Positions 38,905-46,989 of a stretch of 64,000 nucleotides of DNA are shown here, piece after piece; positions within the stretch are counted from its first letter, which is position 1; each line of letters opens with the position of its first letter. Both the position numbers and the translations under genes were made by a program. The notes below the pieces were generated by a model. The model did no database searches. It worked only from the letters and a program-made list of their open reading frames with translations, and had not been told where the DNA came from. This DNA is from Trichoplax adhaerens (taxonomy: Eukaryota > Animalia > Placozoa): NCBI RefSeq assembly GCF_000150275.1, contig NW_002060943.1, positions 5,538,008 to 5,602,007 of the forward strand, read 5' to 3'.

Positions 38905-39580
38905 ATTTTTTAATCGTATTCGGATAGGCTTGAAAGTATTCAGTAAAGACAGTACAAGTTTGTTCTATCAGCTCGTCAATGCGTAATTATAACGGCGACT
39001 GCAAAATGATTGTAATGTAATACAAATTATGATATGTAAGGGCAATTAAAGTTGCTGTCCAGTTTAAAGAGGTACTTTTACATATGTCACTGCGTTAGAT
39101 CCTTTTAATATATCAAAATTTTGTTCGCTCATTTTGGTTAGTTATTGATAAGTTTTGCGTTGGTAAGAGATGAAATGTGTATGTTTTGTACTGCAGTTTA
39201 TTACTTGATACGGTTTATTTTACTGATTAGTTCTTGTATATAGGTAACCATTAAAAAGGACCATTGATAGTAATTATCTGATAAGTCATACTCGATTTTT
39301 GAGGGTTATCATAATATTTATTATTAATACAGTATTGGTCTCATACAAGTTATTTTGCGTAATTTAAATTGCTTGCGTCTTACATCGTCTTATCAAGTAC
39401 AGTAATAAGAATGTATTCTATTAAAAATTTGGTATTAGTGACTTGATGCTATTCACATAAATGATCTTGTGTACTTTCATGCATCAGTATTGCTGGCTTG
39501 GTGAAACAGTAGAAAGTTTTATTTACAGCATGGACATTGAGGTCATTTACAGTACAGCTCGCTCGTTTGGCTAAACGAAT

Positions 39581-40054
39581 TTTTGGGTTAAGATTCTTTG
39601 AGAAGTGTTGAAGGGAAAAAGCTTTTAAAAAGTATTTTCCATTTTCAAGTCCCGCGTCCATCCCAGCATTTTTGGGTTAAGATTCTTTGAGAAGTGTTGA
39701 AGGGAAAAAACTTTCAAACGGTATTTTCCATTTTCAAGTCCCGCGTCCATCCCAGCATTTTTGGGTTAAGATTCTTTGAGAACTGTTCAAGGGAACTACT
39801 GTTCTATTAAATTTTTGGGTAAGATTCTTTGAGAACTGTTCAAGGGAAAAAGCTTTCAAACAGTATTTTCCATTTTCAAGTTCCGCGTCCATCCCAGCAT
39901 TTTTGGGTCAAGATTCTTTGAGAACTGTTCAAGGGAACTACTGTTCTATTAAATTTTTGGGTTAAGATTTTTGGGTAAGATTCTTTGAGAACTGTTCAAG
40001 GGAAAAAGCTTTCAAAAAGTATTTTCCATTTTCAAGTCCTGTGTCCATCCCAGC
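39581..40054. repeat. Tandem minisatellite with long (~89 bp) and short (~54 bp) unit types
   Basis: Core ttttgggt(t)aagattctttgagaa(g/c)tgtt(g/c)aagggaa occurs about 6 times (39581, 39670, 39759, 39813, ~39901, ~39970). Each copy is followed by either ...gtattttccattttcaagtcccgcgtccatcccagca or ctactgttctattaaa. Confidence 0.92.
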
Positions 40055-40903: not shown

Positions 40904-43900
40904 ATGGCTGATAGCGAAACGTCGATGATTGCCAATTTTGTCAGCATAGCTGGCACGGATGCTGATCAAGCCAGATTTTATTTGGAAGCTTCCAATTGGA
41001 ATTTGAAAGTAAGTTCTTTTGACTTTGCTGCGTCATGGACTACTAGGTTTTCTTCTAGTGGTCCATGGCTGCGTGCATTGGTTTCTATTTGCTTACGTAT
41101 ATCTTGTACAAGGGTTGCACTTCTTTGGCCATGTAGTCTTTCTGTACTTTAGAAATGGATCAAGTCATTTTGGACTTCTAGAGTTCAAAGACTGCACCCA
41201 GCAGACCACGAAGATAATTCGACTTGTTGTACTGTACTGTACTGTACTTTGCTTACAGAACGACTTCCAAGTCACGTACAAGTTGTCAGCGGATGGAGAT
41301 CGCATTGCATTATTTCAGTTAAAGAACGCATCTTTGATCGATTTTCACTTTTCACTGTCAATGTTGATCCAGAAGACGATCTTGTAAAGCTCAAACTAGT
41401 ACGTTAAAATAACCAGCATAATACTGTAATGGAGTCAGTGAAAGCTCTTACTATTCCCTTGTCATCCTTGATACATTTTCACTTTTCAGTGGCAATGTTG
41501 ATCGAGGAGACAATCTTGTAAAGCTCAAACTAATGCCTTAAAATTACCAGCATAATACTGTAATGGAATAAGTCAATGCTGTTACTATTCCGTAGACATT
41601 CTTGATACATTTACACTTTTCAGTGGCAATGTTGATCCCGGCCGGAGACGATCATGCAAAGCTGAAACTAGCGCCTTAAAATAACCAGCACAATACTGTC
41701 ATTGAATAAGTGAATGCTGTTACTCTTCCATACCTAGTTTTATCTTTCGCGATTCAACCTGATTCTCTTCTTTTCAACCATGACGAAAAGTAACATTTCA
41801 TCCCAAACGCTATTGTATATTTTTAATTAAAAGCTGATATTTACCCCATCATGTTGGGCCAATTTGTAAAATTTGTAGTTTATAAAATTGTCTTTGTAGA
41901 TGACGCTTAACTAATCTAAATTATATACGTATGTCATTTATGATACGTACGCAGCTTGCACTTGCAAGATATTATGACCGTGGCGATGATTCTTTCGAAG
42001 ATTCTGAAGTATCAACTCAGGTAAAGTGATGCTTACTTACACTACGATGTAGTTTTGAGTTCGCCTAGTTTGAAGTGCTTGTCAATGGCATTGACTCGAT
42101 ACAACCAACATCTTGGTCTTAATGATTAATTAAAAGTTTTCGTACTTAGTGGTGCAAATGTTTGTAATTGTTTAATACTACGTGACTCGAAAGAGTTTTT
42201 ATTGATAAATTGATCTTTGCAACAGTCGTTCGTAAGGGAGGACCAGCGTGCAGGTGGTGGTGTCAGGCAGCAGAAACAAAAATCCAGGTTGATAATTAAT
42301 TCAATTCTACATTTAAAGTAGATTGAACTTGTACAGTGTCACAAACTAGAATATTCTTCATCCAATGAAGATGCATATCAGATATTAGCCGGCTTTAGCT
42401 TTCATTCTCTAACTCTACTATCTTAACAATGTAATTATACTCTATATGTAATATTAGACCCAAGTTTGCGTCTTCATCTGATTATTTTAAACCGGATGAT
42501 GATGAGGAAGAAGATGAAGCTGGACAAGAATTTTATGCCGGCGGTTCTGAAAAGAGGTAACGCCACGCATATTCACCATTGGTTTGCTAATTAAGAAAAT
42601 TCTTCGATTGTCATGTAATGTATATCGTGTTTGTAAACTAGTGGTCAAGTTGTAAAGGGTCCCCCTAGGAAGAAAACGCCTTCATCGATTGCGGAATCCG
42701 TTTTTAAAGAAGCTAAGGCGTATGTAGATTAAAGGTGTTAGCGTTTGCCTTAATCTCATTACTTAATTACTTAATTGAAATCATTATAATTGACAGTCAT
42801 GGAGCTGAAGCAGTGTCACCTGACGAAGACGATGGTGAGAAAGCAAAGATGGCGCCCTTTGGTGGATCAGGTATATACAGTACTATACGGTAGACTGATG
42901 AATTGCGAGACTACAAGTAGATAATGTTGTCGCGATGTACCGTTTTAATATGTCGGCTTCTGCATATCTGCGATAAATCCAGGACACCGATTAGGTGACG
43001 AAGACGGACCTTCTACTGGCGCCGCCACGTCCCTCACTAGTTCTCAAGCACCAAAAGATACCAAAAAGGTTTGCAACAATTACTACTATAATTATAATAA
43101 GTATGTATCAGCGACGAATAAAAACACGCTGATATTCAATTTTATTATAATTATCAACCGTCAATGGTAATTGAATTTAGGTAAATATAAATATACAATT
43201 TTGGGCTAATGGATTTTCTGTCGATGATGGACCTCTTCGAGATCCGAATGATCCAGCGAACAAGCAATTCCTAGAAGAAGTTAGTAAAGGGTAAGCATTG
43301 CATTTTTTCCAAATGTGCCAAATATAGTAAAATGGTGAAATTGATCTTATTCAGCGAAATTGTATTTGTTGTACTGTTAGCTATGTCCCTTCTGAGTTAA
43401 TGGCGATGGCAAAAGGCAGAGAAGTCGCAGTTAATTTGGTAGACAAACGTTCAGAGGATTACGTCAAGCCTAAGCAAAAATTAAAAGCTTTTACTGGACA
43501 AGGACATATGCTCGGAAGGTATGCTAGAATATTAATTATGTTTAGACCTTTGCTCATAATAGCAATTTATAAACTTGCTTTGGTAGTCTTGTATAAAATG
43601 AACGCGGAAAATGAAATGTGGTTATAAATCTTCACTATAATTATTAACTACGATCGTAGTGATGATAACGGAGAAGATAATGATGAACAGCCTTTACTTG
43701 ATGCCAGATATTCAAATAATTCATGGTGGCGTAGCATGTACATTGTTTTACAGTTATTCGTCATGCGGATGTTAGTCAATTTAGGCTTTTTCAGGTATAA
43801 CACAGGTTATATTAATGACTGAGTAGAATGTAGTAGTATTCGCGTATAAGTATAGCTGATTTGAACGGTGCTACTCTGGTACTTTTATTGCCACTGTTCG

Positions 43901-44536
43901 ATGTTCGGCTGTCAATTAAGGGCTATAGTTATAGTATTTAGCATTAGTAGCTGATAATACAAATCTTGCGATGCTGAAGTGTTGTAACGAACTTTCTTCA
44001 CTTTTATTTTTATCTTAGTCCAGCACCGGCGGTTTCTTCTCAAACTTCTTCAACTAGCGCCACTTCAAATGAACCTCAAAATACAGTTAAGCCAAACGTT
44101 GATGAAAGCCAACCGACGACTTCGATAACTATCCGTTTATCTGATGGAACAAGGTTATTGATGACGTTATTAGATATTTTTTTATCACTTTTTTTTGGAG
44201 TTGATATAAACTAGTAATTAATTGTTAAATTCAATTTAACTTGAAATATTTTTCTTCCGTATTCGGTTGCTAGGCTTGTAACCAGGATGAATGTATCAAG
44301 CACAGTCGGAGATTTGAGGCAGTTCATTAGTCGGTATGCATTTTGTTACACGACTTATTTCCATGTTGCTTTCTAAGTTTTTCAACGGGACATTTTTATA
44401 TAGGGCCCGACCATTACCTCCCGGTAGTAAATTCAATCTATTGACTACATTTCCTAACAAGATTTTGGACAATGATTCCTTAACGTTGGAAAGTGGAAAT
44501 CTGCTCAATTCGGTTATTGTTCAGCGATTGGCTTAG
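40904..44536 (+). CDS. NSFL1C: p97/VCP cofactor p47 (UBA-SEP-SHP-UBX), ~381 aa; ~426 aa if the cassette exon is included
   Basis: Exons 40904-41008 (UBA-like, [12 protein letters not shown]), 41955-42020, 42226-42287, 42458-42556 ([12 protein letters not shown]), 42642-42719, 42797-42870, 42983-43068, 43181-43290 (SEP: [14 protein letters not shown]), 43381-43518 (SHP: [10 protein letters not shown]), 44019-44153 (IRLSDGT), 44274-44333 and 44404-44536 (UBX: LLTTFPNK). Total 1146 nt in frame; AATAAA at 44884. Confidence 0.93.
41342..41730. repeat. Tandem repeat, 3 copies of ~134 bp, in p47 intron 1
   Basis: cacttttca(c/g)tg(t/g)caatgttgatc...aaagct(c/g)aaacta...ttaaaat(a/t)accagca(t/c)aatactgt...ttact occurs three times (~41342, ~41476, ~41610). 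Confidence 0.88.
43660..43794 (+). CDS. NSFL1C: Candidate symmetric (phase 2-2) 135-nt cassette exon of p47
   Basis: Acceptor ttattaactacgatcgtag, donor TTCAG/gtataa. Open in the p47 frame, encoding [44 protein letters not shown]. Flanking introns would be 141 and 224 nt. Confidence 0.62.
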
Positions 44537-45298: not shown

Positions 45299-46471
45299 TT
45301 AATGATTTCGTAAAAAGGTGAGGAAAATGCTCATGTTGCTTTCAGCTTCCTGTCTAACGAATCGTCTATCACTAGCTAAAATAAGTTGTTTTAGTATAAC
45401 TTCATCACTTCTACCGACTGATTGCAAAAATTGATAACGTAATTTTATCTTATTAAAGTTGCATGTAAATATAGCAGGTGTTTCTTTAATTTCGTCCAAA
45501 CTGCATTTGAGGGTATCGTGAGCAAATTGAAATCTATCTTGCAGAGACGAAAGACTGAAACTTAATAAAGTCGGAAAAGTTAGTATAAGAGACTTAAATT
45601 CTTCATCGGTATAACCAGTTTTCAAAATAAAGGTTTTGGTATCTTTCATGACTTGAACATCACGTCGGAGTATGCCAGGATATTCGTTAATGATTGCCCT
45701 AATTTCTTTATAGCTGTAATCATCAGATCTTAGCCACTCGACAGAACTTTGTATAGTGTCGAAATTTTTAATTAGAAAGCTAGGTAATCTTCTAATGATG
45801 GAGCCAATATCATGCTCTTTAAATCCTAAACTAGCTAGCCAATCTATTCTCATTTCTACGTCTGATAATGTAAAACTAAACAGCGAAGGCTGTAATTGAA
45901 TTAAATGAATTATGACCCGCCTTTGTTTTATTAGTGATAGTAAAATATTTAATTTCGGTTTAATTTCAGTCTCTATGCCTTGTAATAGTATCTGAGGTGC
46001 TTTGATAATCATATTATTTAGATTTTCTTCATAAAGTCCAAAATCTTGCCAAAATTGGATGCTCCTTTTTAATCTGTTTTCTCCAAGTGTTAATAACCAA
46101 GGGGTTGATTCAATAGTTGAAATCAAGTCGGCAGTGCTAATACCAAGATTTTTTAAACATGTAAAATTATTTCGTACTTGGTTTACATCATAGCTTAGCA
46201 GTGAACTACATGATTTCTCTAAAATTGCGATATTAATACCAGTACTAATCAAATAATTAACAGTTTTAAAGGAATAGTTCGGTTTTATGTCTTTATCCGG
46301 TTGCGTAGAAAGAGCATTTCTATGTATTAATTTACTGGTAGCGACTGTGAACCAATTGTGATGATAAATCCACGATGAATTTTTAAGTTTTGTAGATTGA
46401 TTTCTATACGATATTAAAGATGCTAATCGAATCAGTAAATAGTTTTTGCGGAGAATCACTACGGTTGCCAT
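45299..46471 (-). CDS. Mitochondrial transcription termination factor (mTERF) family protein, ~390 aa, intronless CDS
   Basis: Repeated ~35-aa mTERF motifs (PWLL, PQIL, PSLF, PSFL, PGIL, PTLL, PAIF, each followed by an L..lG helix) and a basic N-terminus poor in acidic residues, typical of a mitochondrial presequence. The ORF track starts at a TTG (46510); the first in-frame ATG is at 46471. Confidence 0.88.
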   Translation of the reverse strand: MATVVILRKNYLLIRLASLISYRNQSTKLKNSSWIYHHNWFTVATSKLIHRNALSTQPDKDIKPNYSFKTVNYLISTGINIAILEKSCSSLLSYDVNQVRNNFTCLKNLGISTADLISTIESTPWLLTLGENRLKRSIQFWQDFGLYEENLNNMIIKAPQILLQGIETEIKPKLNILLSLIKQRRVIIHLIQLQPSLFSFTLSDVEMRIDWLASLGFKEHDIGSIIRRLPSFLIKNFDTIQSSVEWLRSDDYSYKEIRAIINEYPGILRRDVQVMKDTKTFILKTGYTDEEFKSLILTFPTLLSFSLSSLQDRFQFAHDTLKCSLDEIKETPAIFTCNFNKIKLRYQFLQSVGRSDEVILKQLILASDRRFVRQEAESNMSIFLTFLRNH

Positions 46472-46989
46472 GAAATACTGACTGAGCCTAGAGATCGTTG
46501 TATAGTTCAAATCAATGGGAACGCTGTTTCAGTGAAGTGTCCGATGGATATCAATGTTTCTGGTTCTTCCTGATCTGATATTTCATTTTTAATCTGGCAA
46601 TATAGAGTTGAATATTAAATCCATAGCATTGGCAGCATTACTATTGTTTAGCACGACATATACTATATAGCATTGTACACCTAATAATTTACTAAAAGAT
46701 AGTTTTAATAGCTCATGACTGAAGCTTACACTTGAGGAAGGTTCTGCTGTCAACATGAACTAGACATAAGTCATATGCTATACATTATATAGCACTTTAC
46801 GTAGCAAAAATCAAAGGGCAAATAGTTAACTCACGCCCTTTGATTTTTGGTCCAATAATCTAGCCTTCCAGATTAAGAGATTTTGCACAATTTAAAATTG
46901 AATTGAATTTATGATTTGGACAGGCTTGGATGCTCCTTTCTTTCTGCAAGCTTGATATGGTGTCTTGTTCAAGATCAACTCTTAACTTA

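What the first reader, a model, noticed from the sequence alone, without database searches (positions are those of the whole stretch)
43660..43794. Hidden cassette exon that could make soluble p47 a membrane-associated, dileucine-sorted p97 adaptor
Seen: the intron between the SHP-box exon and the UBX exons holds an AG/GT-bounded 135-nt segment. It is stop-free and phase 2-2, so it can be included or skipped without a frameshift. It encodes an acidic stretch ending in DEQPLL, then [23 protein letters not shown]. Skipping gives the canonical ...GHMLGSPAP. Established: [DE]xxxL[LI] motifs bind AP adaptor complexes for endosomal/lysosomal sorting, and p47 is normally soluble, whereas other UBX proteins (UBXD8/FAF2, UBXN4) use hydrophobic hairpins to bind membranes. 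Inference: alternative splicing produces an isoform that recruits p97 to endolysosomal or Golgi membranes. A monotopic or hairpin anchor would keep both SHP and UBX cytosolic. I do not know of such an isoform being described.
Basis: partly seen in the sequence, partly recalled or inferred. Interest (0 to 1): 0.8.

Follow-up and report, generated by a model that had tools for sequence, protein, structure and literature searches.

The report
Conserved extra exon in placozoan p47
The 135-base segment is almost certainly a real exon of the only p47 (p97-adaptor) gene of the placozoan Trichoplax and is already in the public protein model, but it is conserved as RNA rather than as protein, so the membrane-anchor idea is unproven.

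Summary
The window is Trichoplax (Placozoa), not human. In detail: 43660-43794 is AG/GT-bounded, 135 nt, phase 2-2 and open, and it encodes the stated peptide.

The exon is not hidden. The public proteins XP_002107905.1/B3RL52 (T. adhaerens) and RDD44992.1 (Trichoplax sp. H2), both 426 aa, already contain it.

An open segment like this arises by chance in about 20% of random introns. But the segment is kept, with no indel, in two other placozoan lineages at 87-89% nucleotide identity. It is the best-conserved block of the gene, and the intron around it is about 50% identical. A conserved block framed this way by chance has p of about 0.007. I read it as a real exon (about 0.85).

Its evolution is not protein-like:
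- dS is 0.1-0.2, against 1-3 in the neighbouring exons.
- dN/dS is about 0.5-1.4.
- Variable sites by codon position are 8/6/6.

A second conserved intronic block (43868-43945) can pair with the exon's 5' half over 35-42 bp.

Best reading: a regulated, probably alternative, exon under RNA-level constraint. No transcript data were reachable. The peptide is an acidic stretch with DxxxLL followed by one marginally hydrophobic helix. Membrane or dileucine sorting stays speculative.

The parts
40904..44536 (+). p47/NSFL1C-like gene (UBA, two SHP boxes, SEP, UBX). It has 13 coding exons in the public 426-aa model; it is the only SEP-domain gene found in this genome.
   Evidence: Pfam hits on single exons. 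Exon model. Public proteins P0155 and P0156 match the window's exon translations apart from two residues in P0155. SEP search of the own genome.
42226..42287 (+). Exon 2b of the public model (62 nt). I first missed it. The next exon then starts at 42458.
   Evidence: P0156 sequence against window sequence. A diverged, still open counterpart with an in-frame length difference is present in L007 586-720.
43381..43518 (+). Exon with the end of the SEP domain and the C-terminal SHP box (FTGQGHMLG). Its donor is at 43519.
   Evidence: Coding-type evolution: dS 2-3, dN 0.05-0.08, variable sites 7/2/26 by codon position.
43519..43659 (+). Intron upstream of the cassette (141 nt; 144 nt in L006, 72 nt in L004). 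It is not conserved.
   Evidence: 45-57% identity with many gaps.
43648..43659 (+). 12-nt palindrome (a 4-bp stem with a 4-nt loop in all three lineages) that contains the acceptor AG. It is extended by neighbouring bases into a longer hairpin in the window and in L004.
   Evidence: Sequence. Stem present in the minimum-energy folds of the window and L004, and as a shorter 3-bp stem in L006. Conserved 9-10 of 10 nt.
43660..43794 (+). The cassette exon: 135 nt, phase 2-2, 45 codons. It is the best-conserved block of the whole gene.
   Evidence: Contained in P0155 and P0156.
43676..43735 (+). The 5' half of the cassette, which can base-pair with the downstream intronic block.
   Evidence: RNAalifold. 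Present in the whole-intron minimum-energy fold of all three lineages. Duplex energies -33 to -42 kcal/mol, z -2.6 to -5.4. 105 of 111 pair cells canonical, against 27-58% when the partner is slid.
43795..44018 (+). Intron downstream of the cassette (224 nt). The donor GTATAA sits in a small conserved 7-bp hairpin with 43781-43788.
   Evidence: pairs at columns 134-153; donor score 6.0, within the range of real donors, top 0.7% of decoy GTs.
43868..43945 (+). Conserved intronic block. It is the only block at about 80% identity in the gene that is not an exon, and it is complementary to the cassette's 5' half.
   Evidence: (81-83% identity).
44019..44153 (+). Next exon (linker and start of UBX).
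   Evidence: Coding-type evolution: dS 1.1-1.6, variable sites 19/8/28.

Best explanation
43660-43794 is a genuine, placozoan-specific internal exon of the single p47/NSFL1C gene. Its sequence is held mainly by RNA-level constraint. The acceptor and the donor each sit in a small conserved hairpin. The 5' half of the exon pairs with a conserved block about 75-150 nt into the downstream intron. The most likely purpose of such a structure is to control how often the exon is included, so I read it as a regulated, probably alternative, cassette exon. Inclusion inserts 45 residues directly after the C-terminal SHP box: a disordered acidic stretch with DxxxLL and one 20-residue hydrophobic helix. Skipping restores the ...LGSPAP junction that p47 proteins of other animals have. 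Shown: the anatomy, conservation, substitution pattern, complementarity and presence in public models. Inferred: that the exon is alternative, that the duplex controls splicing, and anything the peptide does.
For: - Three lineages keep the 135 nt with no indel and with AG and GT intact.
- Identity is 87-89%, against about 50% in the flanking intron and 64-80% in the neighbouring exons.
- All other blocks at about 80% identity in the gene are exons.
- A conserved block framed in phase by AG...GT and open has p of about 0.007.
- Donor and acceptor scores lie within the range of the gene's real sites.
- The exon is part of both public protein models.
- dS is 0.08-0.20, against 0.6-3.0 in E8 and E9, and variable sites are 8/6/6.
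- Low dS with conserved flanking intron is the published signature of conserved, regulated alternative exons (PMC1543662, PMC2784930).
- The exon-intron duplex is supported in all three lineages.
- Sense-strand folds have z of -1.8 and -2.9 in two lineages; antisense folds are near 0.
- p47 proteins of other animals have no insert at this junction.
- Only one SEP-domain gene is present, so a soluble canonical form would have to come from this gene.
Against: - No transcript, junction or peptide evidence could be reached. Inclusion and skipping are both unobserved here.
- The two public models are not independent: the H2 annotation used T. adhaerens UniProt proteins as evidence.
- The duplex has no double compensatory change: 6 one-sided changes keep pairing and 6 break it in one lineage each.
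- One lineage (L006) gives no fold z-score signal over the sub-region.
- Only three lineages were available.
- Keeping the frame open through the observed substitutions has p of about 0.22 by chance, so it is weak evidence on its own.
Confidence: 0.55

Rival explanations
1. Constitutive exon, as in the public models. Every placozoan p47 carries the 45-residue insert, and the RNA structure is simply needed for correct recognition of this exon.
For: Both public 426-aa models include it. Its splice sites are as good as those of the constitutive exons. Exon 2b of the same models is also real-looking, so the models are credible.
Against: Constitutive coding exons of this same gene show saturated dS and a strong third-position excess, and this one does not. 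The sole SEP-UBX adaptor of the animal would then always carry a hydrophobic helix between SHP and UBX, which no other sampled p47 does.
Confidence: 0.25
2. Not an exon. It would be a conserved intronic structured RNA or a cis-regulatory element (for instance one governing splicing of the long intron, or an unclassified intron-hosted RNA), swept into the gene models by ab initio prediction.
For: There is no coding periodicity in any of the six frames and dN/dS is near 1. A paired conserved partner block exists. The region is also open in a second + frame and on the - strand. The H2 model may merely copy the older one.
Against: The block ends coincide with in-phase AG and GT around an open frame (p of about 0.007). 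The donor is in the top 0.7% of GTs. There is no Rfam match at E below 1. A UGAUGA...CUGA pair exists, but with no terminal stem and about 160 nt spacing, and no conserved ACA box. The two flanking introns have ordinary lengths for this gene, while 500 nt would be unusual in its 3' half.
Confidence: 0.13
3. The cassette makes a membrane-bound, AP-adaptor-sorted p47 isoform that brings p97 to endolysosomal or Golgi membranes.
For: DxxxLL with an acidic run (net charge -6) lies about 12 residues before a 19-20-residue hydrophobic stretch in all three lineages. Kyte-Doolittle 19-residue mean is 1.75-1.85 and hydrophobic moment is low. AlphaFold2 models it as an isolated helix (residues 294-313, pLDDT up to 81) between disordered linkers.
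Against: Selection acts on nucleotides, not on the peptide. The LL codons lie inside the RNA duplex, which alone can explain their constancy. It is too short for a UBXD8-type hairpin, and a single span would separate SHP from UBX across the membrane. No relative of the peptide was found anywhere.
Confidence: 0.15
4. Alternative last exon. When the hairpin-embedded donor is not used, translation stops 5-9 codons later. This would give a UBX-less p47 with a C-terminal hydrophobic helix (tail-anchor-like topology).
For: Read-through reaches a stop after 9, 5 and 5 codons in the three lineages. The donor lies in a conserved hairpin. The topology would keep UBA, SEP and SHP cytosolic without needing a hairpin anchor.
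Against: The donor GT and its context are conserved and strong. No conserved polyadenylation hexamer lies downstream. The helix is weakly hydrophobic for a tail anchor.
Confidence: 0.05
5. Chance open reading frame in an intron, with no function.
For: About 20% of random 500-nt introns hold such a segment.
Against: 87-89% identity across lineages whose synonymous sites and introns are saturated.
Confidence: 0.01

Closest known systems
p47 / NSFL1C (with p37/UBXN2B and UBXN2A): UBA-SEP-SHP-UBX cofactors of p97/VCP
   Same: Same domain order, two SHP boxes, and the same intron position right after the C-terminal SHP box. The skipped junction LGSPAP equals the animal consensus.
   Different: A 45-residue insert with a hydrophobic helix lies between SHP and UBX. 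It was seen only in placozoans among the roughly 30 full-length homologues inspected. One other protein (P0067) has an unrelated 75-residue insert at the same site, which looks like a retained intron.
Conserved, regulated cassette exons under RNA selection pressure (low dS, conserved flanking intron; PMC1543662, PMC2784930)
   Same: Frame-preserving, dS far below neighbouring exons, raised dN/dS, and a conserved downstream intronic element.
   Different: Those sets come from vertebrates and have transcript proof of both isoforms. Here no transcript was seen, and the organism is a placozoan, where splicing regulation is hardly studied.
Exon-intron duplexes of ADAR editing sites (exon plus intronic editing-complementary sequence)
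   Same: A very conserved exon lacking synonymous change, together with a conserved complementary block in the downstream intron.
   Different: Placozoa lack ADAR and editing. The only A_deamin gene has no dsRBD next to it. No ADAR has been found in T. adhaerens, and it was the only animal examined without an A-to-G editing signal (PMC4323055, PMC9989829).
Membrane-bound UBX proteins UBXD8/FAF2 and UBXN4/UBXD2 (hydrophobic hairpin anchors; from general knowledge)
   Same: A hydrophobic segment in a p97 adaptor that could keep both flanks cytosolic.
   Different: There is no sequence relation. The segment is about 20 residues with R, Q and N inside, and it is not a hairpin of 30 or more residues.

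Membership tests
p47/NSFL1C family | N-terminal UBA-like domain | tested here: met
   PF22566 and PF14555 on exon 1, E 3e-12.
p47/NSFL1C family | SEP domain followed by an SHP box (FxGxGxxLG) | tested here: met
   PF08059 on exon 43381-43518 and on 43181-43290. FTGQGHMLG is read directly.
p47/NSFL1C family | C-terminal UBX domain | tested here: met
   PF00789 is precomputed for the whole protein P0155. The last exon alone scores 16.5 bits, below the cut-off. The AlphaFold2 model has a confident beta-grasp region at residues 351-425.
Conserved alternative cassette exon | Length a multiple of three, open, with splice sites conserved between species | tested here: met
   135 nt with AG/GT in three lineages.
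Conserved alternative cassette exon | Depressed synonymous rate and conserved flanking intron | tested here: met
   dS 0.08-0.20 against 0.6-3.0. Conserved intronic block at 43868-43945.
Conserved alternative cassette exon | Both inclusion and skipping seen in transcripts | not testable with these tools
   No placozoan transcript data were reachable. Junction patterns were absent from JGI metagenome contigs.
[DE]xxxL[LI] AP-adaptor sorting signal | Motif present and conserved | tested here: met
   D-E-Q-P-L-L in the window and D-E-M-S-L-L in the others. However, the codons lie within the RNA duplex.
[DE]xxxL[LI] AP-adaptor sorting signal | Cytosolic, membrane-proximal position in a membrane protein, with binding to an AP complex | not testable with these tools
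   Needs localisation and binding assays.
Transmembrane or hairpin membrane anchor | Hydrophobic stretch long and apolar enough to span or dip into a bilayer | tested here: inconclusive
   Kyte-Doolittle 19-residue mean 1.75-1.85 (above the usual 1.6), but Q, R and N lie inside and the summed insertion energy is about +3.4 kcal/mol (scale from memory). It is a single 20-residue helix.
Box C/D or H/ACA snoRNA hosted in an intron | C and D boxes closed by a terminal stem, or two hairpins with H and ACA boxes; a match to an Rfam model | tested here: not met
   UGAUGA at 43660 and CUGA at 43819 have no terminal stem and lie about 160 nt apart. ACA near the block's end is not conserved. The best Rfam E-value is 3.5.
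ADAR editing substrate | ADAR enzyme present in the organism | tested here: not met
   One A_deamin locus without a neighbouring dsRBD. The literature reports no ADAR found and no A-to-G editing signal in T. adhaerens.

The most novel reading that the evidence does not exclude
Placozoans use one p47 gene to make two p97 adaptors. A structured-RNA switch (exon-intron duplex plus hairpins over both splice sites) would decide whether a 45-residue module with an acidic dileucine signal and a hydrophobic helix is inserted between the SHP box and UBX. That would tether p97 to an endomembrane, an independent invention of what other animals do with separate genes such as UBXD8 or UBXN4.
Probability: 0.15. 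Interest if true: 0.7.

Novelty: new variant of a known kind. Interest (0 to 1): 0.45.

Why it matters
p47 is a core, normally soluble cofactor of the p97/VCP ATPase. A lineage-specific exon that is the most conserved stretch of the gene, yet evolves as RNA rather than as protein, is a clear candidate for structure-controlled splicing in one of the earliest-branching animal phyla, where splicing regulation is almost unexplored. Two simple experiments are set up by this result: RT-PCR across the exon, and minigenes with the pairing broken and restored. For annotation, the reference 426-aa protein may describe only one of two isoforms. If the insert does bind membranes, it would show a second evolutionary route to membrane-tethered p97 adaptors.

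Tried and rejected
- **Paralogue or transposon origin:** the peptide and the 311-nt region are single-copy in the own genome.
- **Relatives of the peptide:** Pfam gave nothing. The word search found only the orthologous ORF P0154. The ESM Atlas gave only generic lone-helix look-alikes.
- **Known RNA family:** none in Rfam. The snoRNA boxes do not fit.
- **Antisense or other-frame coding:** no three-base periodicity in any phase.
- **ADAR editing substrate:** rejected, because there is no ADAR.
- **Synteny route through the mTERF neighbour:** the hits sat on contigs too short to reach the intron.
- **Exact look-up of the mTERF protein:** own-genome records are withheld.
- **Splice-junction patterns (inclusion and skipping) in JGI metagenome contigs:** both blank, which is uninformative.
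- **Proteomics paper on Trichoplax (10.1038/ncomms2424):** not held.
- **Gene or protein accession in the paper library:** no paper names it.
- **My first 358-aa exon model:** it missed exon 2b and was corrected from the public protein.
- **Global fold z-scores:** inconsistent, at -1.8, -2.9 and +1.0. I lean on the specific duplex, not on overall stability.
- **One script timed out** and was rerun with simpler shuffles.

Full report
**Origin and rules.** The window is AT-rich (about 32% G+C). It lies on a 13.26-Mb contig of a 105.6-Mb, 1414-contig assembly. The window's p47 exon translations agree with TRIADDRAFT_63499 of Trichoplax adhaerens. It is a placozoan, not human, so the rule on human contigs does not apply. 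No joined spliced model was handed to any search tool. Searches were made exon by exon by reference (including alignment A4, whose rows are single exons) or with public protein ids. Exon coordinates were concatenated only inside the sandbox, to check frame and length.

**The observation.** Searches confirm it. AG lies at 43658-43659 and GT at 43795-43796, with 135 nt between them. The segment is open in the phase set by the exon that ends at 43518 (two bases carried). It encodes an acidic stretch with DEQPLL, then WW, then a hydrophobic run. Skipping yields GHMLGSPAP. The surrounding gene is a p47/NSFL1C orthologue (UBA, SEP, SHP boxes, UBX). On its own the segment is unremarkable: 18-21% of simulated 500-nt introns of this composition contain an equally long, phase-compatible AG/GT-bounded open segment.

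**It is not hidden.**
- A profile search with single-exon rows returned "NSFL1 cofactor p47 [Trichoplax sp. H2]", RDD44992.1, 426 aa.
- Its 90% cluster also holds XP_002107905.1 / B3RL52, the reference T. adhaerens protein, also 426 aa.
- Both read ...[19 protein letters not shown]...NLGFFSPAPAV....
- They also contain a 62-nt exon at 42226-42287 that I had missed. That exon has a diverged but open counterpart in another lineage.
- The cassette has therefore been in the public proteome since 2008, as an ordinary exon.
- The two models are not independent, because the H2 annotation used T. adhaerens UniProt entries as evidence (PMC6057997).
- No paper in the library names the gene.

**Conservation.**
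- A search with the SHP-box exon found ORF fragments that had been called on genomic contigs of two other placozoan lineages. These fragments led to the contigs L004/L005 and L006-L008.
- These lineages are distant. The neighbouring mTERF protein is only 57% identical, and synonymous sites of the flanking p47 exons are saturated (dS 1.1-3.0).
- All three carry the cassette: exactly 135 nt, no indel, AG and GT kept, frame open.
- Identity is 87-89% to the window. The flanking intron is at 45-57%, the SHP exon at 79-80% and the next exon at 64-69%.
- In sliding-window comparisons across the gene, every block at about 80% identity is an exon, except one intronic block at 43868-43945. The cassette is the longest and best-conserved of all.
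- A conserved 156-nt block that had nothing to do with splicing would be framed by an in-phase AG...GT around an open frame in only about 0.7% of simulations.
- The donor CAG|GTATAA scores within the range of the gene's real donors and above 99.3% of decoy GTs. The acceptor is average for this gene.
- With the cassette as an exon, the flanking introns are 141 and 224 nt, which is ordinary for this gene.
- I put the probability that it is a real exon near 0.85.

**How it evolves.**
- The SHP exon shows dS 2-3, dN 0.05-0.08, and variable columns 7/2/26 by codon position.
- The cassette shows dS 0.08-0.20, dN 0.06-0.15 (ratio about 0.5-1.4), and variable columns 8/6/6.
- The lack of periodicity holds for all six frames, so an antisense or shifted-frame gene is excluded.
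- Keeping the frame open through the observed number of random substitutions has probability of about 0.22, so it says little.
- Selection therefore acts on the nucleotide sequence. The data give no separate sign that the peptide is what is preserved.
- Low dS together with conserved flanking intron is the published mark of conserved, regulated alternative exons (PMC1543662, PMC2784930).

**RNA structure.**
- The intronic block 43868-43945 is complementary to the cassette's 5' half (about 43676-43735).
- The helix appears in the RNAalifold consensus and in the whole-intron minimum-energy fold of each lineage.
- Duplex energies are -34.4, -32.6 and -41.9 kcal/mol for 35-42 pairs. These give z of -3.4, -2.6 and -5.4 against shuffles, and this is the best partner among all windows of the gene's long introns.
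- 105 of 111 pair cells are canonical, against 27-58% when the partner is slid by 1-4 columns. Six variable pairs stay paired through one-sided changes, six are broken in one lineage, and none shows a double compensatory change.
- The acceptor AG lies in a small palindromic hairpin, and the donor in a 7-bp hairpin.
- Sense-strand fold z-scores are -1.8 and -2.9 in two lineages but +1.0 in the third. Antisense values are near zero.
- This structure is a well-supported hypothesis, not a proven one.
- An ADAR editing substrate would look the same, but placozoans lack ADAR and editing.
- No Rfam family matches and the snoRNA boxes do not fit.

**The peptide.**
- All three lineages keep an acidic run (net charge -6), D-E-x-x-L-L, WW, and a 19-20-residue hydrophobic stretch containing Q, R and N.
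- The Kyte-Doolittle 19-residue mean is 1.75-1.85 and the hydrophobic moment is 0.12-0.14.
- AlphaFold2 on the public 426-aa protein gives a disordered 273-292 and a lone helix at 294-313, with pLDDT up to 81.
- About 30 full-length p47 proteins from other animals go straight from LG to SPxP.
- The genome holds only one SEP-domain gene.
- The peptide has no relative elsewhere.
- A peripheral or marginal membrane helix is possible. The dileucine codons lie inside the RNA duplex, so their constancy needs no protein-level reason.

**Verdict.**
- The claim of a hidden, undescribed isoform is wrong, since the exon is in the reference protein.
- The idea that the exon is alternative fits the evolutionary signature but remains unobserved.
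- The membrane and sorting function remains speculation (about 0.15).
- What is new here is that the exon is the most conserved part of the gene, evolves under RNA-level constraint, and has a conserved intronic pairing partner.

Noticed in passing
window 41329-41729: Three tandem copies of a 134-nt unit (85% matches) lie inside intron 1 of the p47 gene. This accounts for much of that intron's unusual 946-nt length.
   Followed up: partly
window 39579-40054: A tandem array with 89- and 142-nt periods (89-95% matches) lies about 850 nt upstream of the p47 start codon. It produces repeated short open frames on both strands.
   Followed up: partly
window 45299-46510 (- strand): An intronless mTERF-domain gene (PF02536, E 8e-55) lies tail to tail with p47, about 760 nt from its stop. 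It is only 57% identical to its orthologues in the other placozoan lineages, and synteny with p47 is kept in L006.
   Followed up: partly
window 42226-42287: A 62-nt exon of the public p47 model has no counterpart in p47 of other animals. It is open but much diverged, with an in-frame length difference, in L007 586-720. Unlike the cassette, its divergence looks ordinary; no rate or codon-position analysis was run on it.
   Followed up: partly
protein P0067: A p47 homologue from another organism carries an unrelated 75-residue insert at exactly the same position after the SHP box. It is probably a retained intron in that model, and it shows that this intron position is shared among animals.
   Followed up: no
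I did not examine it.
   Followed up: no
G000:C1411:4492547-4493632: This is the only adenosine-deaminase (A_deamin) locus found in the genome. It has no dsRBD exon nearby, so it is probably ADAT1 rather than an ADAR.
   Followed up: partly
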